A stretch of DNA of 57,109 bases, counting the filler, from Dugesia japonica (taxonomy: Eukaryota): assembly GCA_001938525.1 (NCBI GenBank). It is 5 parts of 5 records of this genome, joined end to end, with 100 filler letters (N's around TTAATTAATTAA, not from the genome) between each part and the next. Parts side by side here need not be neighbours in the genome. Positions count along the whole stretch, not along the records: positions 15,262 to 25,363 come from MQRL01611999.1; 4 more parts are not named here. One strand, 5' to 3'. How positions within the stretch are numbered: position 1 is the stretch's first letter; every line of letters starts with the position of its first letter. The position numbers and the translations under genes are program-made. The notes beneath the pieces are model-generated. The model saw only the letters and a program-made list of their open reading frames with translations. It did not search any database and was not told the origin of the DNA. Shown here one piece after another: positions 2,178 to 25,363 of the stretch.

Positions 2178-2351
2178 TAAAGAAATGTTGGGTATTTCTA
2201 CACAACAAAGTGATTTTATGGTTCGTTGATTTTAAACTATTGAATGATACCATGTGTATTAGTTTACGGATGTTGATTTTTCCCTTGATGTGTCGATACA
2301 ATATTATATAGTAGATATTTTAATCAAAAACGTATAAATATGGTAATATAG

Positions 2352-2560
2352 TGTAGTCGTTTTCTTATATAAATAAACAAACAGTAACCTTTTAATATTT
2401 ATTTAAGGTATATACAGATATAATTTTTACAGTTATAATTCCTATGCGCAGTAATTTAATTTATCAGAGGACTGCTGCCCAAGGAGGTTAGAGTCTCTGT
2501 AAATAAATGACTGAAAATCTATTCAATTCAATCAGTATTTATACTGAATTGAACACTACA
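2352..2560 (+). mobile_element. Possible solo LTR
   Basis: 209 nt bounded by TGTAGT...ACTACA, with internal AATAAA. A similar 3' end (ACTGAATTGCACTACA) occurs near 28250. No TSD found. Confidence 0.4.
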
Positions 2561-3139
2561 TGCATGCATACAACCTCAATATTTTGCATGCAAACATCAA
2601 CATTTATTTATAAAAAATCAATCATTTTCTCTAAAAACAAAATTTTCTGTCTGATTTAAATGTCACAAGNGAAAGTTTAAAAGTCAAATATATACAGACA
2701 TGATTNGTTTTTTTCCAAAATGAAATAAGGTCAAATATATGTACAGAAATTTTTATGACCTTAAAATAAAAATAAAAACTAATTAATTGTACATAATAAT
2801 GAATAATTATTAAAAATAAAATAATAATGAATTCACAAATTACATCCATAAAAATAACAAATACTGCTTATAAAATAAAATGGATTAATAAATTATATCA
2901 AGTTTTTAATATCGATCATTTTTATAAATCATGAAGTCTTTTATAAACAATATCGATTTAAATATCTAATAGTTGAACTGCTTTTCGAATATTGAGTTGA
3001 ATTTGATAATTGAACTAATTGAGGATTGATTGTGTCTGCATTGAATGATAATAGATTGTTATTTTGAGGCTCTGATTGTTGAAGATTTATTACTATGTGA
3101 TGTTGTTATTTGCTATGTGATATTATTGTGTGTTATGCG

Positions 3140-3479
3140 AAAGATAAAGATAAGAAAGATTAAGAAGGAAGAGAAATAGTGGTTGCCTACCGACCACACT
3201 CAATCACGAGTCATGGTATACTGCATCACAGTAAAGAGCTATTGGCTGTTTATTATTTCTGCTTGCATTTCAAATCTTACTTTTACGATAGAAGATTTAC
3301 TCTTAAGACAGAGCTTTATGATCTAACTTTCATGTTGACAACGAAGAAACAAATTACGTCAAAATTCCAGATATGGATTAATTATTTGAGTAGTCTAGAC
3401 ATGGTATTCGAATATAGAAAAAGAATTCATCATAGTAATGCGGATATGTTATCTAGACCAAGATACGGAGTATGTGTAC
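3140..3479 (+). pseudogene. Ty3/Gypsy RNase H fragment
   Basis: KELLAVYYFCLHFKSY...FTLKT...HSNADMLSR; cut off at an AGTAG-type terminus. Confidence 0.85.
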
Positions 3480-3560
3480 AGTAAGTAGATAGTGGTGTAC
3501 TGAGTCACCCCTTCCTCTGACGGGAAAAGTCTTTTGGCATGAGATTTTTGTCTTTTTTTT
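3480..3560 (+). mobile_element. Maverick/Polinton-type terminus
   Basis: AGTAAGTAGATAGTGGTGTA abruptly truncates the Gypsy RNase H frame. Confidence 0.5.
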
Positions 3561-4328
3561 AAAATTTGAATTTTAATGTTTAGTTTACATATACAAAAAT
3601 TAGTATCGTTGGACGACTAATTTGATGGCAGATCCATATATGCATTTAAACATTTGGTTAGATGGAACCGTAACAAAAACAATAAACAACAAAACGGTTC
3701 TACAGCGCCCATTTTTAATTTTATCGGCATTGTTCATACTTATGTATAGCGCATTAATGAAGACTTGAACGGATTTACATTTTTTTGATGCATCGCCAAT
3801 TCATATCAACGTGACGCAGGAATTTTACTAGAGAGTCAAAACCTGCCACCGATTGAGCGTGAGTATCAAAAGTGGGCAGATAAAGTGGAGCGTTGGCTGG
3901 TCCATCAACTCCTTCTCTCCGAGTTCATCCAGTGAGAATATTTTCAAAAATTACAAATCGTGTGGCATTATTAATATAACTAGTTTTGTGTTTGTCCTCT
4001 TCTTAATTGTATAAGGACATATGTACCATGCAATTTGATAAATTGTTTTTTATGTTAACTGTTTTAGTGAACTCTTCACAATCAAGGTCTGTCGCCCCAA
4101 ATAAGAAATTAAAGGCCGATAGCGAAAAAACTGGAATGACGCTGGACCTTTATCGTTTGTCAAAACAAAATTGGGAGACTTATGTGGCAGCCAAAAAGGC
4201 CAATAACAAAATGTAAAAGTGACTATGTTAGTACTATCGAATTGAAGCTGAGGTATCCCATTCTCAGGAATGAGACTGGGAAGCTCAACTTCAGTCGTTT
4301 GCAGATAACATTCGCTCTCTACATGACC

Positions 4329-6133
4329 GAGAAAACAAGCTTAGAGCAGCACTATAGAATTTTGGACCTAGTTTTTAAAAGAATTCAAGAATCAGGATTG
4401 AGAAGTAATCCAGAAAAATTTCATTTATTGCTTGCAGAAGTCAAATGACATGTCAAAGATAAGAATGGAGTCCGAACAAAAATTGAAGCGATAAAGAATT
4501 TTGGATGACCTAAATGTGTGAAGAACTTGAGAAGCTTTTTGGGATATGCAATTACTATAGACGATTTATTAATAATTATTCAAAAAAAGCTAGAAGCTTG
4601 GAGGATCTATGTTAAAGTAACAATAAAAAACTTGTGTGGTATGAAAATTGTGATAAAGCTTTTAATGAGATGAAAGAGGCATATTGAGCTTTCCAAATAT
4701 TAAAAAGAGGTTTTTAATAGATACAGATGCGAGTTTTGATGCAATTGGAGCAGTTTTATCGCAAATAGATGAAAAAGGTTTAGAGCTAGCCATTGCATAT
4801 GGGTCACATGCAATATCAGCTCATGAAAAGGGATATTGTATAACAAGAAAGGAATTATTGGCAATTTACTATTTTTGTGACCATGACTTTTCTTAGTAGT
4901 CTATATATGGTATTGGAATTTATACAAGGTGATAAACACACTAATGCAGATATGCTGTCGAGAATGAATTGTGGTACGTGTGTACAATGCTTAACATATC
5001 ATGAGAATCCAAAGGAAGGAAAAATAAAGACAAAAACTATTAATGGTATATCAGGCTCAGATACATATAAAGGGCAAAGTAATGTAGAAGAAATTGAACA
5101 GATAAAGAATGATATGAAAAATNAAACATGTAAAAAGTTTCGATTAATAGAAGAAATAATAAAAACAAAAGACGGCAAAATATGTATCCCGCCAGAAAAG
5201 AAAATTCAAATGGTAAAAGAAATGCATAATTTATTGATGCACGTTGGTACGGAAAATGTCATAAATTATTTGAAAAATGAATATGATATGGAAGATTTGA
5301 GAAAAACTGTGTCAAAAGTAATTAAAGAATGTACAGCGTGTTAAGTGAACAAAGTAACAACAGTTACAACAAAAGAGGAGACTATAAAATTAAAGTCTAA
5401 TGAACCATTTGAAAGTATTTATATTGATATATGTGGGCCATTCCAACAAACCGTAGGAAGAAAAAGATATATACATTTGCCATAATAGATAAATTTAGCA
5501 GATACATTTGCTTAACAGCCCTAGTTAAACAAGATGAGAAATCAATAAAGAAAACGATTATGGATAAATGGAAACTGAGATTTGGTGCTCCAAAAGAGAT
5601 ACATGTAGATTGTGGGAAGACCTTCGAATCAAAAGCCTTCAAAGAGATGACAGATTCAATGGATATAACAATTAGCTTTTCCCGTCCATATCATCATTAT
5701 ACGAATGGAATAGTAGAGCGGCAGTTCAGAATGATCAGAGATTACATCAATGCAACATTAAAATATAAAAAGAATAAAAATTGAGCAGAGTTAATACTAG
5801 AAATTGAATGCACACTAAATGCAACAAGCCAGAAGACTTTGGGGATAAGTTCAGCAGAAGTGATATTCGGTAAGAAAATACATAAAGAAAGATGGTTCCA
5901 TAATGGAGAAAAGAATGAAGAATCTGGAGAGTTGACACCAACAAAGAGATATTTTCAAGCTGGAGACGATGTGTTAATCAAGGTAGAAAACAGATCAAAA
6001 AACAAAGAAAGATATACAGGTCCATACGAGGTGATAAAACAGAATCGTAGAAGACGATACCTGCTGAAGAGTTCAGAAGGCAAGATTATTGAAAGAAATG
6101 TGGAATAGATTAAAAAATATTTTGAAGAAGGGG
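4329..6133 (+). mobile_element. Decayed Ty3/Gypsy pol (RT end, RNase H with internal deletion, integrase, GPY/F) and polypurine tract
   Basis: FLIDTDAS, KELLAIYYF, NADMLSR, HHCC (H..LMHVG...CTAC), YIDICGP, HVDCG, NGIVERQFR, YTGPY; PPT GAAGAAGGGG at 6124-6133 before a gap; many stops and frameshifts. Confidence 0.92.
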
Positions 6134-6189
6134 NNNNNNNNNNNNNNNNNNNNNNNNNNNNNNNNNNNNNNNNNNNNNNNNNNNTTTAT

Positions 6190-7170
6190 ATATAATTTTA
6201 AAATGTATTTTTAAAACATATGTAAAATAAAATATTCCATAAAATTAAATCGATATTTTTGATTTATTTTATGAAATTATTAGGTAAAATATTTTACAAA
6301 ATTTTTGTATGAAATTAAATATTCCATAAAATGGAATATTTTTAATTTATTTAAAGAAGTTATTAGGTAAAATATTTTATGAAATTTTTATGTAAAATTA
6401 GATATTTCATAAAATTTTAAAAAGTCGAAATTTTTAATTTATTTAATGAAATTAATTGGTAAAATATTTTATGAAATTTTTATTTAAAATGAGATATTTC
6501 ATTAAATTAAAAAGTCGACATTTTTAAAATATTTATAAATTATTATGTAAAGTAGAATATTTGTTATTTATTATTTTATTGAAAAATTTCTCAGATTATT
6601 TGTTTGAATACTATGAATTATTCTTGATATAATTTTTATTTTAATCAAATACACCTGTAATAATAAATACAATTTATGGAGAGTTGTGAAGTTTTGAATT
6701 TAACTAATAATATGAAAATATTTATTTGATTTTATTTATTTTTATTTAATTTAAATTATAAAATAGTTAATTAATCTTTGTTAAAATCATAAAAATATAA
6801 AGCAGTTAATTGATCGTTGTTATAATATGTCTTTGTTATTTTCATGAGTAATAACTTTGTAAATGCAACCATATACTACTTTGCAGTACTTGAAAATTAT
6901 TTTACCAAAAAATTATTTCTTGTCACAACTAAATATACTACGTTGTGGTATTTTAAAATATGCTAAGCTGCAGTATTTTGAAATTAACTAAATATACTGC
7001 ATTGTGGTATTTTTAAATTTTGATACACTTATAAAGGGGATAGAAAAACTATGATACACACACAATGGGGTTAGAAAAATTTAATGAGGATAGATAGGTT
7101 ATGATACACACTAACAAAGGGTATAGAACAATTTTGATACACACATTCATAGAGGATGGAAAAATTATTT
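6190..7170. repeat. Degenerate tandem repeat field (~88-bp units, then shorter units)
   Basis: Recurrent AATATTCCATAAAA...TATTAGGTAAAATATTTT (about four copies), AAATATACT..TTGTGGTATTT, and TGATACAC...GGATAGA. Confidence 0.6.
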
Positions 7171-7859
7171 TGACACTGAACATTGTAAAATTAGTTACTT
7201 TTTTAAACTTTTCACAATTTTCATAAAACTATTTTTAAAAGCAACAGTTTTTATAAGTAAATTTGTTATTTTCATTTTTTTATATCTTTTATATGTATAT
7301 TTTAGATTATAAACAATAATAATAAAAGCATATTGAGAACATTATTGAGCGAAGTAAAAGTACACTAACTATTTTCATTATTTTTATTAATTATTATGAA
7401 CAGTATGAACAATAATAAAAATTTGAATTTGGCAAGTTTTATTAATGGATAATATAAATTTATTGTTATTATTTAATAGCTACTAATATTATTTATTTTA
7501 GAATAATAATTCAACTCAAGGAGGAAGAAGAATCAAAAGAAAGAGTTTAATTAAAGTAAATTTATGATTATTTCTTAATACCTAATAAAATTAATTATTA
7601 TAGAATTATGCTGTCATGTTGTTGCTTAAGAAGCTATTTATGAGAAAAGTTAGTTTTCATTAATTTTATAGTATTTTCTAAATTTTATGTTAATTTTTAA
7701 ATGAACTTTTAATACTTTTTGGTAATTTTTATTAATTTATAAATGAATTTTTAATTTTAATTTAATGCTGAACCTTTAAATATGATTTATGTTAATTTTA
7801 AAACGTGTTATATATTTCAAGTTTTCTAGAATGTTGTACAATATACAAACAATATTATG

Positions 7860-15261: not shown

Positions 15262-15327
<66 letters not shown>

Positions 15328-15330
15328 AAT
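15262..15330. repeat. (AAT)n microsatellite
   Basis: Read directly from the sequence. Confidence 0.95.
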
Positions 15331-15725
15331 AAAGAATTTTTACTACTTGAAAAATGAGTAAATCATATAAATTGAAAGATATTATTTCTTTTAATGGTAT
15401 AAAGTAATCATTAATGAAAATATTATTAATCTTTTGAAATTTTTTATGATTTCTTGAAAGAATGAAGGAAAATATATTTTATTAACTTATGAAAAATTAG
15501 TAAAAATTATCTTACACTCTTCCAATTGTAAAATAAAGTCATAATCATGAAAATTATACTCAAATATTTCAAGACTTGAATTTTTCTGATATTATTTTCA
15601 AATTTCTTTTTAAATATTATTTTACAATATATTACTTACAATTTATCAATAGTGTTTATATATTTAAGTTATATAAATTAAATCAAAACTAATTGAATTC
15701 AATTGAATATTTCTTTTAATTATTA

Positions 15726-17063
15726 CCGTATTTTCCCATCAATAACACATGAGTTATCTATACAGAAAACCTTATCAAAGAAAACCACTTTGCGTTTAAG
15801 AAGGTGTCAATTAGATGTCTTAAGGTTGTCATATTATAAAACACCATATCCGAGCTATACGTAAGATTAAGGCCTGCAGTAACAGTATTCCGGGGCTATT
15901 TTGACGACCTATAAATACTGATATTCGGTATTTAATTAAATATCATATTTCCATTTGGTGTTTAATGAAAGTATTCAGATTACATTAACTAGTTAGTGTT
16001 CCTTTAGCCGTTAAAATATGTTATGTTGTGCAAAGTATTTTTTGATATTTATCTATATTGTTTAATATAATTAAATTATACTCTATATTTAATCACAGAT
16101 AGATTTTGTTGAAAAAATTTGTATTTTATTAATTATTGGAATATATATTTTATTTCAATAGACTTAAGATGAAATTTGAACTAGTTAAAAAAGGCGTTAC
16201 AGACAAAATTTCCGTTTGGCATTATTTTCTGAGAGATAAATCAGGAAAATTGGCAAAATGTATCAAATGAAATATTGAAATAAAAACCTGCGATGGATCA
16301 ACTAAGAACTGCTCATGATATCGACTTGTTAAGAAATAGGGAATTAGATGCAGAATATCTCAAAACTTCAACATTCTCATGTAATAAATCTACTAGTACT
16401 GTACCGCTTAAATTAAAAAAATATCGATCCACTTTAACAATGAAAATGATGATCTTGGTATAGTATTAGCCAAAATGACTGCGGCTGATGGTCTACCATT
16501 TAAAATTTTTATTCAAAGCAAGATTAAATTTTGCAATTAATAAACAAAAATAGATGAATCACAAGGTTAAAGTAAAAACATTTGAGAATTTGGAGAAAAC
16601 TATTAAAAAAGTAATACCTATTTTCGAAGGAAGACGATGTCGAGGAATAAATTTACAAAAACATATGAATATTTGTATACTATTCCCCCAACTAGCATAG
16701 AGGCTGAAGGATTATTTTCCTCATCTGGAAATATTTGTTCAAAAATCAGGTCATCTCTAAGTGATGATACCCTGAACACACTTTGCTTTTTAAGAAGCCA
16801 CTTCCTTTCAAAAAAAATTGATTTTTTTCATTATAGTTTTAGTTTTATTTTTTCCCGAATCAATAATATGATTTGTTTGATTTGTTCTTTTATTAATTAA
16901 CAAATTTATCAATTTATACAATTTGTTTTCAATTTTTAAATAATTCACCAATACCGGTATAATACCGGTATTTATTAAAATACAATACCAAATACCGCTA
17001 TCTATAATTATCTCTGGTATTGCAGACACTACGTAAGATGCGTGTTATCGATGTGAAAATGTG
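15726..17063. mobile_element. Short pogo/Tigger-like MITE, split by a hAT insertion
   Basis: Left end TA-CCGTATTTTCCCATCAATAACAC; right end GTGTTATCGATGTGAAAATG is an imperfect inverted copy. Confidence 0.55.
15868..17031 (+). mobile_element. Non-autonomous hAT transposon (BED finger and dimerisation domain remnants)
   Basis: Perfect 8-bp TSD CGTAAGAT (15860-15867, 17032-17039). Imperfect TIRs TAAGGCCTGCAGTAACAG / TAGTGTCTGCAATACCAG. SVWHYF...AKCIK and TIPPTSIEAEGLFSSSG...LCFLR. Confidence 0.93.
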
Positions 17064-17195
17064 ATTATTGCAATTATTGTGAGAATATTTGTTGGACGTA
17101 TCGATTGATCGTTTTTATAATTCATTTAAAATAAAAGGTTCGATCAAAAAACAAAAAAGAAATTTTTGATCGAAACTTTTATTTTAAATGAATTC
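17064..17195. repeat. Penelope-type inverted-repeat fragment
   Basis: Shares TGCAATTATTG.GAGAATA...TTCGATCAAAA / TTTTGATCGAA with the 21975, 24970 and 44870 copies. Confidence 0.6.
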
Positions 17196-17230
17196 TAAAA
17201 TATTTAATCTACAAATAAATAAAACACTAC

Positions 17231-20200
17231 TTTTATTCGATTCGTTTTCTGTATCTGATGATGGCGATGAACTTCTTGTATCTACTGGACTTTTACGCTC
17301 ATCAGAAACTGAAATTATCTCGATAAATCTATTAATTAAATTTGATTTGTTTTACCTTGCTGAAAGAACTGAATCGAAGAGTTCAAATTTGAATTGAAAA
17401 ACTTTTCTTTTCGATCGATATATAAAGGTTTATTTTGTGTTGTTTCATCTGAATTTGTTTTAATAAAAATCTTTTAATTATTCATTTTATTATAGAAATA
17501 AACAAAAACCAGTTTGTTTTAATGCTGATTCAGAAGATGGAGAATTCAGTGTATAGTAAACAGGATTGAAACGATAAATATTATCTAAAAGTTAATCAAT
17601 TTCTTTTTGATATAATTTAGAAAATCTCACCATCCTTATTAGGATAAATAAGAGAGCGAGTATCTTCATTGCTAAAATATTCTAAAATAATAACAATATC
17701 ATATTTTCATAAGCCATATTTTCACACCTTCGAATTTTCCGCTGTTNCTTTTTAGACTGAATGACTTTGTTTTAATGAAAACATTTTCGTCTTCATTGAA
17801 TTGATTAGGAAATTCTGATGATGTTTCGAACTCGTCAACTGAAAATATAAAATATGAATTCTAATTATTTTTTATGGAGTTTTCTTCTGGAAGTTTTTTA
17901 AATTTAATTTCTTTCATAAAATCCAGTTTCAAATGTTTTGTTTTAATATATTAAAATATTTTGAGAAATAAAATTTGTTTAATATCTAACTGATATTTCC
18001 AAATATGATGTTCATCCCAATAATATGCGCATAAAAAATTCTTGTTGGCATATTATGCTTATGCTTATGCAGAACTTAACTATAAGACATAAATAATAAA
18101 TGTAAATTGTTAAAAAATTGATATACTTAAAAGATTTAATTTAATTTAATTTTAAATAATCTTTTATATTTATTGTTTTGTAATANTTTATGTGTTCATA
18201 CATATAAATTTAATTTGTTTTAATCACTTGTTAACCATTGATCTGTATTTATCAAATAAAACTTTTCAAAATGCGAATATCAAAAGTATTTTTTTCTCTT
18301 CAATATTTCCATCAATCGTTCTATCGATTCCTCGAAAACGATATATATTTATTATATTGTGTCATTTGGTGTTAGTAATAAAAATATGTATATGTATATA
18401 TGTATATGTATATATNNNNNNNNNNNNNNNNNNNNNNNNNNNNNNNNNNNNNNNNNNNNNNNNNNTTTTTTTAAAACACATAATAACTTTATTAATTAAA
18501 AATTCTACTTGGATAAAATTTATTAGTTGCTTAATAGTTTCATTCAAAGAAGCCACCGTCAGCTTCGTAAACTTATTCTACACGAGATCAAAATCGTTTT
18601 CAAGCTTTAAGTAAATGTTTCTGGCTCATATTTGACATTACCTTCACTATGGTGGCTTTCAAAAAATCTATAGTGTTGTGAGAATGCTCATTGATCTCTT
18701 TCTCAATAACGCTCAATATGTAGTAATCTATTGCATTATGGTTTGGGAAGTTAGGAGAACAAATATCAGAAAAGATGTGGTCATAAAATTTTCAGCTATT
18801 TATTTCTGCGTTAATTTAGCCTTGTGTTATGAGGCAGAGTCTTGTTGAAAAATATAAGGTCTTCCATTTTGACCTGAGTTTATTCAAGGCCTAAAATCTT
18901 TCAGGTCATTAATATAGGCAGCAAAATTCACTTTAAGGCCTTGTGGAAATGAGTGAGGAGACATAACATTTTCTTCATTGCTGACTACCCTTGACTAACC
19001 ATGACAGTTGCAGGAAATTTGTTGTGTATTACTCTCGGAACTTTACTAGATTCTCTACTTGACCAAAGATCATTTCTTCTGTTAACTTTCTGATCTTAAT
19101 CAAAGTTTTTTTTCATCCAAGTAAAACCAAATTGCATCGCTTTTTGCTGATTTTTTGATTTTGCTTAAGACCTTTTTAGATCTGATTAACTATTTTTTGT
19201 TTTTTCAAACAGAAATTGTCTTTTCTTTGGCACATAAGGTTTATATCCGATGTTTTTATGGACAGTATTTCTGATTGTTCCTTCTAAGACCTTGAAATCT
19301 TTAGCAAGTGATCACATAGATATTCTGGGATTATGATCAATGGTCTGCTTAACTTCTTGGATAAATTCAGCTTTTCTGACCATGTCAGAGCGTTTGGTAT
19401 GATTTTTACATTTCGTTGTTATATTTTCATTTTTGCTTTCTAGCACTTTACGAATATTAAAAACAAAAGATCGTGCGATTCCATTCAATTAAAAAATAAT
19501 AAACGAAAAATATTTTGATTATAATTTCAATAGGATTTTAGAAATAATTTGAAAACATTTTTTTCTTCACATATTTGATTAAATATTATTCGTAAATATT
19601 TTTATTAGAGATTTTTTAAAATCTTTTAGATCATAAATAAACCTTTATGAAAATGAAAATGCTTCAAAGTCTTTTAATATCGAATTTGCTGAAGATAATG
19701 CTATACCAATTCCTTGAAATTTAACATAAAATGATTTTAATCCATTTCTAGTTATCGATAACAGTTTAAAAACTCACGAGGATAATACTAATGATAATTT
19801 TGTTGCTATAGATAATGTTGGAAGAGAGGAGGAGATAAAACAGGAATTTAAAAAACCAACAACCGCTGTAACATTTTCCGTTGCATTAGAAGCTCTTAAA
19901 ACGTTCTGCGGATATTTTGAAAAAAATCATTGTGATTCAAATAAATTGGAAAATCAAATTTTTGTTATTAAGGAGAAAACATCGTTCAAAGAACACTATA
20001 TAATTACTTTGAAAGTTTTACTAAATATAATAGTTTTCTGATTGTAATTAATGCGAGAATATAAATAAAAATTAAACAAAACAAATATTTTGATCAAAGC
20101 TTTTATTTTAAATGAAATTTTGATAAATCGAAAAATAATTGTTCAACAAGCATTTTTAAAATTTACTTCGGATATCTACATTTTTTATTCATTACTTTTT

Positions 20201-21755
20201 ATTAATTTATTCAAACTTTTGTTATTATGTAGTAAAATCCATATTAAATTTTAATAAGCAATAAAAAATATGCATTATATTCAAAACCTTTTCTTAAAGA
20301 TCTCAGCTTTAACATTAATATTACTGTACTTCGTTTAATTACATACTTCACTTAACTGCATATTACTGGTGTAGCCCCACGACCATGGAGTTAACTTGAG
20401 GGTACTGTATACTAATACAAAACAATTTAATTAAGATTGAATTAAAACAGATTAATTCTTTTGGAGTTATTGTTAGATCAGTTTGAAGTACTCACCGGAT
20501 AATTAATTTCACAACTCGTTTCCATAAAAGATTTATTCACAAAATAAAAACTGTGAATATAAATTTGTTTTTTTTTTAAAAATTTAAAAATTTCAATTTC
20601 GAAACGAAAAATAGAAAATGTCAGTATTAGGGATATAATTAGTTAACTAATTAATTTAAATAATATATGTATTTATATTTATATATGCATTTATATTTGT
20701 GTCACATAATTCCCATCGTAAGCTCTTCGAAAGATAATTAATATTCCATATTATGTAATAATAAGAAATGGAAATTATTATATCATAATTTAACTTATTA
20801 TAAATGCAATCATAGGTTGAGATTTGATATAAATATTTCGATGAATCAGAAGTGAATCAGAATATATTTTGATATTTAATAAATATTTGTATTAGATTGT
20901 GTTGTATCTTAACGTAACAGTCAGCATTTTGAAAAATATTTCATTAAGTCGGTTTATTTTAAATTTTAATGTAAAATTTAAAAATACCATTAAAAATATA
21001 TTTTGTTGAAAATAAGAAATTTGATTATTTTATACATTATAATAAAATTATAAAAATTTTCAAATTTTAATATATATTGTAAATTAAAAATTTTATATTT
21101 AACACAAATTATAAATTTCACATTCGTTTTCTGTGCACAAATAAATTTTAAAATTTATTTTACAAATGATTTTAATGATTCAATTCAAATATTTAACCAA
21201 TCTGATTTTAATAAATCCCGTTTCAAAATACAAAAAATTTCAATCTACTTTTGAAAACTATCTTACAGTTATCTTTTATGATTTTATGTTTTGGTAAAGT
21301 GAAAATTCGTCCTTGATGAAGACTAAATTGAAATAATGAATATTATTTGAATATGAATATTGTATGAATATTCTAATAAAATAGAAAAAAAATAATTCTC
21401 ATCTTCGCATTTTTGTAAAGTTTTAGTTATTAGTTAATATTATCAAAATATATTCTTGTTCAAATATTAAAAATTAGCAAAACATTTATACTTGGTTCAA
21501 TTTCCTTTTCGTTGAAAATATAAATTTCATTTATTAAACTCTCGGTATTTTCTTCGTGTTCTTTTCTTTGTTCAATAAAATCTTTTGGAAAACTCATATC
21601 TATATTTAAGGAAAAATAAAATGAAAATTCCAACTTAATCCAAAGTAAGTAGTTACATTTGTTTTTGTAAAACTCGTGGTGATGCAAAGTTGACATCGGT
21701 GTATTATGTTCTTTCTCTTCTGTTAAATCAAATTGAGAAAACGGAATTCTTGTGT
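17231..21755 (-). CDS. Partial orphan gene with symmetric phase-1 exons: 21755-21657, 21599-21492, 17838-17728, 17681-17631, 17584-17510, 17448-17356, 17308-17231
   Basis: All exons are AG/GT-bounded, 99, 108, 111, 51, 75, 93 and 78 nt long, and splice into one stop-free frame. Short introns are 57, 46, 46, 61 and 47 nt. Product is hydrophilic and S/E/N/K-rich. Start and end not found. Confidence 0.7.
18640..19425 (-). pseudogene. maT/DD37D-type (Tc1/mariner superfamily) transposase remnant
   Basis: KFPATVMV, FPQGLKVN, GRPYIFQQDSA, SPNFPNHNAIDYY (decayed PPxSPDLNPxDY). Confidence 0.88.
19600..20407 (+). mobile_element. pogo/Tigger transposon 3' remnant
   Basis: C-terminal VTFSVALEALKTFCGYFE...NYF; right TIR GAGTTAACTTGAGGGTACTG followed by TA. 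Confidence 0.7.
21040..21270 (+). repeat. Dispersed AT-rich repeat, second copy at 25590-25830
   Basis: Colinear ~230-nt match ending AAAACTATCTTACA in both copies. Confidence 0.75.
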
Positions 21756-21974
21756 CTGAAACTAATATTATAATTAGAATTCAAATTAAATCAGATTACT
21801 TATAACTAAGTAGTAGTAAACAAATTTATTAACATTTAATTAATAAAGGATATCGCCGAATAGTATCAGTGATATTATTTAAGTAGAATGACATTTTGTG
21901 ATACTATTTAGATAATGATATTATTCAATGCTTTCATTTTTTTACAAATGAAATTTTAAAGAATTATAATTACA

Positions 21975-22770
21975 ATATTTGTGAGAATAATTATTGGACA
22001 TAACTATTGATCGCATTTGAGATTTCATTAACATAAAGGAAAAGCTTCGATCAAAATAAAATGTATTTCTATAGAAATTCAAATTTTTTGACAATTGTCT
22101 TCTTCAGGAAAATGATGACTTTTTGAACAAGATTCAATACGATAATATATCTTTTTTACAAAATTCTTAATTTTCTATCACAATTTTATTGGTCTATTAA
22201 ATTAAAAAATTTTTATTTTAAAATTAAATCTCAAAAAATCTTTTTGAAACCTGATATCAACGTGATTTTCAATAATTACAATAATTAAAATTTTAAATTG
22301 ATAAAAGATCAATAAATTAAATTTTAAAAGAATTTTTTAATAAAAAATATTGAGAAAAGATTTTTTTTAATATGAATTGGGAGAATGTTTCTTAAAAATT
22401 GATAGAAAAAAATAATTTTATTTTACTATTTCAATATTTTAATATTTTGATGTTAATAAAATACATATTTTAAATGTTTTAATACTTTTATATATTAGTT
22501 TTTAAAAATTTGGAAGATTTTCAATTCGATTTGGTTAAAAAAGATTTTTTGAGATTTCATTTATAAAGAAAAAAAATTATAATTTAATTGACCAATAAAA
22601 TTTTGATAAAATCTAAAGAATTTTGTAACAAAGATCTATTATCGTTTTGAATCTATCAAAACGTTATCATCATATTCCTGAAGAAGACTATTGTCAAAAA
22701 TTTTAATTTCTTTAAAAATACATTTTATTTTGATCGAATCTTTTTTCGTTATTTTAATGAAATCTTAAAA
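21975..22770. mobile_element. Palindromic Penelope-type element with a degenerate hammerhead in each arm
   Basis: Arms ~22020-22245 and ~22542-22768 are inverted. Each contains TTCCTGAAGAAGAC.ATTGTC[A]AAA. Confidence 0.7.
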
Positions 22771-22872
22771 AAATTAATTAAAAATACTAAAATTACTGTT
22801 AATTAACTAAATATTCAATAAATCTATTTTTTAAAATTGTTTTAAAACTTAAACAATTTTTTTGTCAATCAA

Positions 22873-23118
22873 TAAACTCGTTTAAAACAACAAATAATTT
22901 TTCATTTCAAAAAATTATTTAACAAAGCAAAGATCAAAGTTGTTGTTCTTTTATTTTTAAAATCTGTCTTTATGTCAAAGTTTACAATAAGAATTTACTG
23001 AAAACGGTTCCTAAAGAAGTCTATGCCGAAATATTGAAAATAAAAGAACATCAACTTTGATCTTTGCTTGTTAAATAATTTTTCGAAATAAAAAATTATT
23101 TGTTGTTTAAAACGAATT
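22873..23118. repeat. Short palindromic element with decayed hammerhead-like motif
   Basis: ~85-nt inverted arms; TTCCTAAAGAAGTCTATGCCGAAATATTGAA near 23010. Confidence 0.6.
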
Positions 23119-24764
23119 TAAATATTCAATGTTTTCATCGAGAATAGAATCATTATTAAGTTGTATTTCTGGTTTCAAAGTAGACCATAACTTGCATACT
23201 TTTTTACCATACACGTCTTTTTTGACTTTTAGTGATAGTATTTGGGTTGTAATATTGTTTAAATAGTATCAAGAAAACTGCATGACATTTAGAGATACTA
23301 TTTAAGTAGTGATATTATTTGTTATAGTAAGACAAATCAGTGATATTTGTTATATAAAAAGTAGAATAATTGTTTCTTTTATTTTTTATTTATCTTGATC
23401 GAGAAATCCTAAACATTTTCAATTTCTTTGTTGCCATAAATTCTTAACCAATAAGAATTCAATTAATCCAATTAATTCCAAATGGGTAATTAGTTAGGAT
23501 TTTATGACTGGAATAAAATTGATAAAGACTATGTTGTAATATAGAATAGGAAAAAACAAGTTTAACGTAATAGTTAATTTAAATGATAGATGAAAGTAAA
23601 AAAATTAATAATAAAAACAATAAAACGTAATGACATACTTATGTTTAACAATTACTCACCACTTTCAGTATACTCAATTTCAGTTTTTTTATTAATTTAT
23701 TAAATTATATTAAAAGATAAGAAAATGTTTTTAATTAGATCTGATGAATAATTAAATCAGTTTTAAAACTACCCCGCATTACTATCAAAATTTGAGTCAT
23801 AAGTTACTTTATTGCATTTATAAATAGTACTTCAACAGAATTTTAAGAAATATACTTTAAGAAGCTACGGTTTTACTTATATTTTTCTTTTTTCTTTTTC
23901 TTTATTTTAATGAAATATATTATGTGAGTTTCTGAAGCAGGATTTCTGAACAAATTTTTGCCATGACACGCTTATGAACATATGAAAATATCACAATACA
24001 AATATAGTTATAAATATCATTAGATAAAACACATTATAGCATATTTTCTCAAGGTGAGGCCGCGAACATTTTCCTTGGGGCCATAGAAAATAGAATTCTT
24101 AAACAATTTATTTCCATTTCTTAAAAGTTCAAATCTTTTTCACAAATAACCATTCGTAAATTATCTCCAATGAAAATCTTAATTCTTTTTTAATGTTTTA
24201 AATGATACTTATTCTTGAAAAGGCACTTTTACAGAGATAAGTTATGGCAAAAGACAACAAAAAGAGTTCAGCAAAATTAAATAAATTAAATTCATTCTTA
24301 ACAGACGTTTACAATTGAAAGATATCAGATTCTTCAAATTCGGTTTAATTTCCCTTCGATAATTTCAGATCAATTAATTTATTAATATCAAACATCTTGA
24401 AAAAATTTTAAAACATTTTTTGGAAATATTTATGAGAAAAGGCTAAATTAACATTTTTTTCAAATGGTGCCAAAAAAATTATTATTTTAGAATAATGTGC
24501 TCTTCAAACATTTCTCTCTGAAACACTGCATTGTATTATTATTATACAACATTTATTTACTAACAGAATAATTAAAACTTATGGACTCATGGAAATATAC
24601 TTTAAGGTTCAAGAGGGTGCAGAAATTCACAAAATTGTCCCTGAAATTTAGTTCAATTAAATTACATAATAATTTTACAATGCGTCTAAATTTGATTAAT
24701 ATTTCATTAAATTAAAAGATTTGATAAAAATGTTGTTTTTCTTTTTTTATTTATTTTTTTTTAG

Positions 24765-25200
24765 TTATCCGAATTTTCGACTATTGTCTTCAGGAATTTA
24801 ACTTTTTAATTGATTCAAGACAAACAAAACAACATTTTGATCGAAGCTTTTAATTTAATGAAATCTCAGATACGATCAATGGTTAAGTTTAACAATTATT
24901 TTCACAATAATTGAAATTATAAAATTATTTAAAATTATTATTGCAATTTTAAATGATAAGTAAATCTTTTACAATTGCAATTATTGCGAGAATAATTTTT
25001 GGACATAAACATTGATAGTTTTTCATAATTCATTTAAAATAAAAGCTTCGATCTAAATTTTTTTTCGTTTTTTTGAGATTAATTCGACTTTTTAAAAAAA
25101 GTTTAGAAAAAAAGTCAATTCCTAACGAAGACAGAGTCAAAATATCGAATTAATCTCAAAAACCAAACAAATCAATTTTGATCGAAGCTTTTTTTTAAAT
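24765..25200. mobile_element. Cluster of Penelope-type inverted repeats
   Basis: Same TTTTGATCGAAGCTTT core. Hammerhead-like motifs at ~24769-24798 (-) and 25117-25151 (+; AATTC CTAACGA AGACAGAGTC AAAA TATC GAATT). Confidence 0.65.
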
Positions 25201-25332
25201 GAACTTAGATAAATAAATCGATAATAATTTAAATAAAACTAAAAAAGGATTATAAAAAGGGAAAACGTCCACAATTTATTAAATACAACTATTTACAGAA
25301 GAACCTTAATAAATATAATAAATATTTATACT

Positions 25333-25363
<31 letters not shown>

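What the first reader, a model, noticed from the sequence alone, without database searches (positions are those of the whole stretch)
17231..21755. Hidden orphan gene made entirely of symmetric phase-1 cassette exons
Seen: seven exons (99, 108, 111, 51, 75, 93, 78 nt), each a multiple of 3, all phase 1-1, joining without stops: TRIPFSQFDLTEEKEHNTPMSTLHHHEFYKNK / MSFPKDFIEQRKEHEENTESLINEIYIFNEKEIEP / DEFETSSEFPNQFNEDENVFIKTKSFSLK.NSGKFE / YFSNEDTRSLIYPNKD / NIYRFNPVYYTLNSPSSESALKQT / ETTQNKPLYIDRKEKFFNSNLNSSIQFFQQ / SDERKSPVDTRSSSPSSDTENESNK. Known: schistosome micro-exon genes use symmetric exons to generate variants by skipping, though their exons are shorter. Inferred: a fast-evolving disordered protein whose exons can be skipped freely. 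Nearby partly broken exon-like pieces (20550-20496, 23740-23660, 15585-15516) could indicate exon turnover or decay. Linkage across the 3.6-kb intron is assumed.
Basis: partly seen in the sequence, partly recalled or inferred. Interest (0 to 1): 0.7.

Follow-up and report, generated by a model that had tools for sequence, protein, structure and literature searches.

The report
Spliced gene of same-phase exons
The seven small exons are real and are spliced as predicted in public RNA data, but they are only the middle of a larger gene coding for a polar, probably floppy protein with no detectable relatives, and nothing yet shows that its exons are skipped to make variants.

Summary
Each has AG before it and GT after it, each is a multiple of 3, and all are phase 1-1. 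Transcript contigs of run X11 carry GT..AG junctions at exactly four predicted introns, and a fifth shows as a 9-letter overhang.

- **Exon 1:** the RNA starts it 6 nt further up, at 21761, so it is 105 nt and still symmetric.
- **Gene ends:** the RNA runs on past both ends into exons that were not found in this piece (not within 17000-22999, and the upstream exon's letters occur nowhere in it). The gene is therefore larger, and "made entirely of" such exons is unproven.
- **Large intron:** the exon 2 to exon 3 join across 3.65 kb, which holds the assembly gap, is not shown.
- **Coding:** spliced E3-E7 has 0 stops in one frame against 5 and 18 in the others. The product is Glu/Ser/Asn/Phe/Lys-rich, with GRAVY -1.23, and falls on the disordered side of the charge-hydropathy plot.
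- **Relatives:** none were found, but only exon-sized pieces could be searched.
- **Exon skipping:** no skipping junction was seen.
- **Comparison with schistosome MEGs:** the architecture is the reverse of theirs, with larger exons and 46-61 nt introns.

The "broken exon" pieces have no support. This is an ordinary but real lineage-restricted gene fragment of moderate-to-low interest.

The parts
21657..21761 (-).
   Evidence: Open frame with AG before and GTAACT after. An X11 contig fits up to 21761 and then continues with 43 unlike letters that stay open only in the phase-1 frame. The joint 21599/21657 confirms the donor.
21600..21656 (-). Intron 1, 57 nt, GT..AG; it happens to be stop-free and in frame
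   Evidence: Joint skipping 57 nt with CT..AC ends, depth 57.4, in X11. A stop-free genomic stretch runs 21780-21463.
21492..21599 (-). Exon 2, 108 nt, phase 1-1
   Evidence: The acceptor is confirmed by the joint 21599/21657. An X11 contig covers 21511-21585.
17839..21491 (-). Assumed intron 2 (3653 nt). It holds the assembly gap 18416-18465, a probable decayed Tc1/mariner-type relic (about 18480-19490, minus strand), a 93-codon stop-free stretch on the plus strand (19752-20032) and a MITE copy (20068-20154). The junction is not shown.
   Evidence: No E2-to-E3 joint is listed. The phases fit: E2 ends and E3 starts in phase 1. HTH_Tnp_Tc3_2 matches only at E=0.039.
17728..17838 (-). Exon 3, 111 nt, phase 1-1; the single N at 17747 makes codon AGN (Ser/Arg)
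   Evidence: An X11 contig covers 17748-17838 and ends exactly at the acceptor, with 14 further letters of an upstream exon. The joint 17681/17728 confirms the donor.
17631..17681 (-). Exon 4, 51 nt, phase 1-1
   Evidence: Joints 17681/17728 and 17584/17631, both CT..AC, depth 34.3.
17510..17584 (-). Exon 5, 75 nt, phase 1-1
   Evidence: Joint 17584/17631. The donor is supported by a 9-letter overhang of the E6 contig that reads the end of E5.
17356..17448 (-). Exon 6, 93 nt, phase 1-1
   Evidence: X11 record 9 covers 17356-17449 and 17231-17308, with the joint 17308/17356.
17231..17308 (-). Exon 7, 78 nt, phase 1-1; its donor is used and the transcript goes on
   Evidence: Record 9 (271 nt) has 91 more letters after 17231 that lie nowhere in 17000-22999.

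Best explanation
This is the internal part of a real, expressed protein-coding gene on the minus strand of a very AT-rich (about 23% GC) eukaryotic genome.

Structure: seven consecutive exons are joined through short GT-AG introns of 46-61 nt plus one assumed TE-laden 3.65 kb intron. Every intron observed, including the one before E1 and the one after E7, interrupts a codon after its first base.

Product: the exons encode at least 207 residues of an acidic, Glu/Ser/Asn/Phe/Lys-rich, Gly/Ala/Cys/Trp-poor, low-complexity segment. It is most likely intrinsically disordered and has no detectable relatives.

Reading of the uniform phase: it is best read as the usual signature of disordered protein regions that grow module by module from symmetric exons. 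It makes any exon removable without a frameshift. In the RNA examined, however, the exons are joined constitutively, neighbour to neighbour.

Shown: the exons, five introns, the coding frame, and transcription in many runs. Inferred: disorder, modular origin, linkage of E2 to E3, and lineage restriction.
For: - Splice signals and phases.
- Junctions: four exact GT..AG joints plus a 9-letter overhang for the fifth in X11 contigs. The contigs continue beyond 21761 and 17231.
- Exon-only words: 19 runs from 9 studies hold 0.38-0.47 of the sampled words of 17231-17838. This matches the 0.446 expected if only exon-internal 31-mers are present (258 of 578). One run holds 0.72.
- Coding frame: spliced E3-E7 has 0 stops in the coding frame against 5 and 18 in the other two. 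E1-E2 has 0 against 4 and 5.
- Composition: GC by codon position is 0.37/0.30/0.23. Exon GC is 0.30 and intron GC 0.13-0.23.
- Upstream exon: the 30 letters shown are open only in the phase-1 frame.
- Disorder-like properties: GRAVY is -1.23. Mean normalised hydropathy is 0.364, below the charge-hydropathy boundary of 0.441. No 19-residue hydrophobic stretch is present.
- No family or relative: Pfam, PDB sequences, word search, 1.84 billion representatives and metagenome contigs.
- Phase statistics: eight phase-1 introns in a row would have probability of about 1e-4 at the human phase-1 frequency of 32.65%. Symmetric same-phase exons are enriched in disordered proteins (PMC3632108).
Against: - The E2-E3 junction across the gap-bearing intron is not shown, so E1-E2 and E3-E7 could belong to two genes.
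- Disorder is inferred from composition only. Phe plus Tyr make up 13% of residues, which is high for a disordered region.
- No significant similarity between exons was found, so an origin by tandem exon duplication is not supported.
- The relative searches used only exon-sized or read-through pieces. The libraries do not even return this gene's own product, so a blank is weak evidence for 'orphan'.
- The raw-read RNA run X24 had no read on the gene, and three other runs held none of the words. Expression is therefore not universal.
Confidence: 0.6

Rival explanations
1. The seven exons are a MEG-like variation device. Because all are phase 1-1, the cell skips them in different combinations to produce a family of variable, probably secreted, proteins.
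For: All exons are multiples of 3 in the same phase, so any subset keeps the frame. There is a tandem in-frame acceptor at E1, 21761 versus 21755. One X3 contig leaves the reference after the first 10 nt of E4 and stays open in the E4 frame. The word share varies from 0.38 to 0.47 between runs.
Against: Every exon-exon joint seen joins neighbours, and no skipping joint appears in X11. Exons are 51-111 nt and five introns are 46-61 nt, the reverse of the MEG layout of mostly 15-nt exons and 0.1-5 kb introns (PMC10526429). The 5' end is missing, so no signal peptide is known. The product is strongly hydrophilic, whereas MEG proteins are described as hydrophobic and sticky (PMC10526429, PMC10399815).
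Confidence: 0.08
2. The exons are the disordered linker or tail of a conserved, already known protein. Its recognisable domains are encoded by the exons that lie off this piece.
For: The transcript demonstrably continues at both ends, with at least 43 nt upstream and at least 91 nt downstream that are not in the piece. Searches could not use the full product.
Against: Nothing positive supports it. No exon matches any family or protein.
Confidence: 0.25
3. There are two separate genes, E1-E2 and E3-E7, brought together only by the scaffold join at the gap 18416-18465.
For: No joint E2 to E3 and no contig across the gap is listed. X11 contig depths differ: 52-57 for E1/E2 against 18-34 for E3-E7.
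Against: Both parts share the strand, the phase (E2 ends in phase 1 and E3 begins in phase 1) and the amino-acid composition. The X11 contig on E3 carries 14 letters of an upstream exon, so E3 is not a first exon.
Confidence: 0.15
4. It is a non-coding or transposon-derived transcript whose open frame is chance.
For: The region is full of transposon relics and MITEs that are abundant in RNA contigs.
Against: There are 135 and 70 stop-free codons in one frame only, in DNA where about 1 codon in 11 would be a stop. The GC gradient by codon position and the polar composition also argue for coding. No exon is repeated in the piece, and exon depths are modest, not repeat-like.
Confidence: 0.03

Closest known systems
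Schistosome micro-exon genes (MEGs)
   Same: Runs of exons whose lengths are multiples of three, so any of them could be dropped without a frameshift. The product is lineage-restricted with no family match. Automatic annotation is difficult.
   Different: MEG exons are 6-81 bp, mostly 15 bp, and are separated by introns of 0.1-5 kb. MEG products have an N-terminal signal peptide and are described as hydrophobic and sticky (PMC10526429). Here exons are 51-111 nt and five of six introns are 46-61 nt. The product is strongly hydrophilic, its N-terminus is unknown, and no skipping was seen.
Genes of intrinsically disordered proteins assembled from successive symmetric exons of one phase class (Schad, Kalmar and Tompa 2013, PMC3632108)
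   Same: Consecutive exons of the same symmetric phase class (1-1) encode a low-complexity, disorder-like polypeptide.
   Different: That paper often traces such runs to internal tandem duplication of exons. Here the exons show no significant mutual similarity. Disorder is inferred only from composition.

Membership tests
Schistosome micro-exon genes (MEG) | Most of the coding sequence lies in micro-exons (6-81 bp, majority 15 bp) | tested here: not met
   Exons are 105 (or 99), 108, 111, 51, 75, 93 and 78 nt. Four of the seven exceed 81 nt and none is near 15 nt (definition from PMC10526429).
Schistosome micro-exon genes (MEG) | Internal exon lengths are multiples of three | tested here: met
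   All seven are multiples of 3, all in phase 1-1.
Schistosome micro-exon genes (MEG) | Short exons regularly interspersed with long introns (0.1-5 kb) | tested here: not met
   Introns are 57, 46, 46, 61 and 47 nt. Only the unconfirmed intron 2 is long, at 3653 nt.
Schistosome micro-exon genes (MEG) | N-terminal signal peptide; secreted product | not testable with these tools
   The 5' exons are not in the piece. The upstream exon seen in RNA has no match in the window.
Schistosome micro-exon genes (MEG) | Protein variants made by skipping of the symmetric exons | tested here: inconclusive
   Only neighbour-to-neighbour joints appear in X11 contigs. Contigs drop rare variants, and the raw-read run had no reads on the gene.
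Disordered proteins built from same-phase symmetric exons (PMC3632108) | Successive symmetric exons of one phase class | tested here: met
   Seven 1-1 exons in a row, and the flanking introns are also phase 1.
Disordered proteins built from same-phase symmetric exons (PMC3632108) | Encoded region predicted to be mostly disordered | tested here: inconclusive
   Composition points to disorder: GRAVY -1.23, hydropathy 0.364 below the boundary 0.441, and only 1 Gly, 1 Ala, 0 Cys and 0 Trp among about 206 residues. No dedicated disorder predictor or fold was run, because the joined model was not sent to any tool.
Disordered proteins built from same-phase symmetric exons (PMC3632108) | Origin by internal tandem duplication of exons | tested here: not met
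   Of 21 exon-pair comparisons against shuffles, only E5/E7 reaches z=2.8 (p=0.018), through a Ser-rich stretch. This is not significant after 21 tests.

The most novel reading that the evidence does not exclude
A non-schistosome analogue of micro-exon genes. This would be a lineage-specific secreted protein whose mid-sized phase 1-1 exons are combinatorially skipped, or swapped for alternative exons such as the unexplained X3 continuation at E4, to generate protein variants.
Probability: 0.07. Interest if true: 0.6.

Novelty: new member of a known kind. Interest (0 to 1): 0.3.

Why it matters
If the gene is unannotated, this is a clean, RNA-backed correction to a fragmented, AT-rich genome. 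It adds one more example of a disordered, lineage-restricted protein built only from phase-1 symmetric exons. It would become more than that only if skipping isoforms or a secretory role were shown. As it stands it is an ordinary gene fragment with a tidy but known kind of architecture.

Tried and rejected
- **Family and structure scans:** Pfam on six exons gave nothing. PDB sequence search on five exons gave nothing.
- **Word search:** the E1-intron1-E2 read-through (87 aa) and the E7 stop-free stretch (55 aa) found no candidates. The length filter means only proteins of about 30-150 aa were seen.
- **Representatives search:** HMMER over 1.84 billion representatives with the 87-aa stretch gave 0 hits. 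Not even this gene's own product was returned, so the library does not hold it.
- **Metagenome contigs:** one scan found nothing. The other found one locus, L002, which is a chance 8-residue pattern match in 53% GC DNA with a stop just upstream, and it was rejected. The E3 query was too short.
- **Loose-end letters:** the upstream exon and the X3 continuation were searched in the window and are absent.
- **Exon duplication:** not supported.
- **Second copies or decayed copies of the exons in the piece:** none.
- **Non-coding RNA:** Rfam and tRNA scans were empty.
- **Organism identification:** the hAT relic hit only two unnamed ENA metagenome proteins at about 60% identity.
- **Joined model:** the seven-exon peptide was never sent to a search or folding tool. 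It was used only inside scripts for composition.
Full report
**What is in the sequence**

The piece 15262-25363 is about 23% GC.

The seven exons are E1 21755-21657, E2 21599-21492, E3 17838-17728, E4 17681-17631, E5 17584-17510, E6 17448-17356 and E7 17308-17231. Each is preceded by AG, within tttcag, atatag, ttttag or attcag. Each is followed by GT, and each is a multiple of 3 with two leading and one trailing split-codon bases, which is phase 1-1.

The unknown residue in E3 comes from one N at 17747 in codon AGN. That codon is Ser or Arg and cannot be a stop.

A chain of five such exons separated by 40-80 nt is found on the minus strand. The plus strand reaches 3, and 1 of 300 dinucleotide shuffles reaches 5.

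**The assembly gap**

The gap at 18416-18465 lies inside the assumed 3653-nt intron between E2 and E3. It sits between a TATATG-type microsatellite and a probable decayed Tc1/mariner-type relic. It therefore cannot disturb a reading frame.

No laid contig bridges it and no E2-E3 joint was reported. Continuity of the two sides, and so the linkage of E1-E2 with E3-E7, remains an assumption. That assumption is supported only by shared strand, matching phase and similar composition.

**RNA evidence**

Twenty public runs from nine studies hold part of 17231-17838. Nineteen of them hold 0.38-0.47 of the sampled 31-letter words. If only words lying wholly inside exons are present, the expected share is 258 of 578, or 0.446. 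This is what a spliced RNA would give. One run holds 0.72.

Four runs were laid on 17000-22999. Contigs of X11 show the following:
- Joints with CT..AC ends, which are GT..AG on the minus strand, at 21599/21657 (57 nt), 17681/17728 (46 nt), 17584/17631 (46 nt) and 17308/17356 (47 nt).
- The contig over E6 carries 8 further letters that, with one ambiguous base, read the end of E5. Five of the six predicted introns are therefore confirmed at base resolution.
- One contig fits up to 21761 and then continues with 43 unlike letters. E1 is then 105 nt.
- The 30 letters shown of the upstream exon are open only in the frame that continues phase 1. They are not present anywhere in the window.
- The 271-nt contig over E6-E7 has 91 more letters after 17231 that lie nowhere in 17000-22999. 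The E7 donor is therefore used, and at least one more exon follows.

The gene thus has at least nine exons, of which seven are here, and both its ends are missing.

No joint between non-neighbouring exons was seen. The raw-read RNA run X24 (10.5 million reads sampled) had no read on the gene. Three other runs held none of the words, so expression is not universal.

**Coding**

Spliced E3-E7 has 0 stops in 135 codons in the predicted frame, against 5 and 18 in the other two frames. E1-E2 has 0 in 70 codons, against 4 and 5.

GC falls from 0.37 to 0.30 to 0.23 over codon positions 1 to 3. Exons are 0.30 GC and introns 0.13-0.23.

The product is rich in Glu, Ser, Asn, Phe and Lys. It has one Gly, one Ala, no Cys and no Trp. 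GRAVY is -1.23. Its mean hydropathy of 0.364 lies below the charge-hydropathy boundary of 0.441, and there is no hydrophobic 19-residue stretch. I infer an intrinsically disordered acidic segment. This is inference from composition only.

The two X11 differences listed in E1 and E2 (21693 and 21554) both change the amino acid by my reading of the codons (Ser to Thr and Glu to Val). Two sites are too few to conclude anything.

**Relatives**

The joined peptide was not sent to any search or folding tool.

| Search | Query | Result |
|---|---|---|
| Pfam | six exons | nothing |
| PDB sequences | five exons | nothing |
| Word search | 87-aa and 55-aa stretches | no candidates |
| 1.84 billion representatives | 87-aa stretch | zero hits |
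| Metagenome contigs | 87-aa and 55-aa stretches | one chance pattern match, rejected |

These blanks are weak evidence. The queries are short and low in complexity, the word search sees only proteins of similar length, and the libraries evidently do not contain this gene's own product.

**How it compares with known kinds**

*Schistosome micro-exon genes.* These have 10-20 exons of 6-81 bp, mostly 15 bp. Their introns are 0.1-5 kb, and the products carry an N-terminal signal peptide and are rather hydrophobic (PMC10526429, PMC10399815).

This gene shares only the multiple-of-three rule. Its exons are larger, its introns are tiny and its product is hydrophilic. Skipping is not shown and the N-terminus is unknown, so it is not a MEG.

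*Disordered proteins built from symmetric exons.* The better match is the general pattern described for disordered proteins, which are built from successive symmetric exons of one phase class (PMC3632108).

At the human phase-1 frequency of 32.65% given there, eight phase-1 introns in a row would have a probability of about 1e-4. The uniform phase is therefore not chance. The tandem-duplication origin often seen in such genes is not supported here, since exon-exon similarity is not significant.

- 23740-23660 has stops in all three frames.
- 20550-20496 and 15585-15516 are open only in frames that do not fit phase 1. The first lies in a stretch with repeat-like depth and non-GT-AG joints.
- No part of the piece resembles any exon beyond 9-14 nt chance words.

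Exon turnover or decay is therefore unsupported.

**Verdict**

This is a real, spliced, coding, apparently lineage-restricted gene segment made of phase-1 symmetric exons.

It is only the middle of a larger gene. The long-intron linkage is unproven, cassette skipping is unshown, and it is not MEG-like in architecture.

The source organism is coded in the tools and could not be identified. Its introns of 46-61 nt, TTTCAG-type acceptors and load of hAT, mariner-type and MITE repeats fit a small AT-rich invertebrate genome, but they do not prove a flatworm.

Noticed in passing
window 17051-17200, 20068-20154, 21953-22760, 24808-25213: Several copies of one MITE-like family with inverted ends around a TTGATCGAAGCTTTTATTTTAAATGAA motif. 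One is a near-perfect 38-nt palindrome at 17113-17200, 31 nt past the E7 donor. Another has 122-nt arms at 22130-22654. These stretches have very high summed depth in RNA-type contigs (X11: 2300-7300).
   Followed up: partly
window 15740-17050 (+): Decayed hAT-type transposon relic. The 87-aa ORF at 16637-16897 matches Dimer_Tnp_hAT (E=6e-5), and a BED-finger-like stretch lies upstream by eye. The closest proteins found are two unnamed ENA metagenome fragments at about 60% identity.
   Followed up: partly
window about 18480-19490 (-): Probable decayed Tc1/mariner-type transposase relic directly beside the assembly gap. The support is weak: HTH_Tnp_Tc3_2 at E=0.039, an FQQD-like motif by eye, and many stops.
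   Followed up: partly
window 19752-20032 (+): A 93-codon stop-free stretch on the opposite strand inside the big intron. It is covered by contigs of X1 and X3 that continue for at least 255 nt unlike the window from 19944. It has no Pfam match and is probably a repeat or another transcript.
   Followed up: no
window 17672 (E4): One X3 contig fits the window only from 17672 upward and continues for 158 nt of other sequence. That sequence stays open in the E4 frame and is absent from the piece. It could be an alternative exon, a paralogue or a divergent allele.
   Followed up: partly
window 21755-21763: Tandem in-frame acceptors 6 nt apart (ttag|tttcag|). The RNA contig seen uses the upstream one. 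Using the other would change two residues' worth of sequence.
   Followed up: partly
window 21463-21780 (-): Intron 1 is 57 nt and stop-free in frame, so E1, intron 1 and E2 form a 106-codon open genomic stretch. Retention would keep the frame, but the RNA contig shows the intron removed.
   Followed up: yes
window 15262-15330, 18380-18415, 25330-25363: Microsatellites lie at both ends of the piece, (AAT)n and (TTTA)n, and a TATATG-type repeat sits at the left edge of the assembly gap. These are the likely reasons the assembly breaks there.
   Followed up: no
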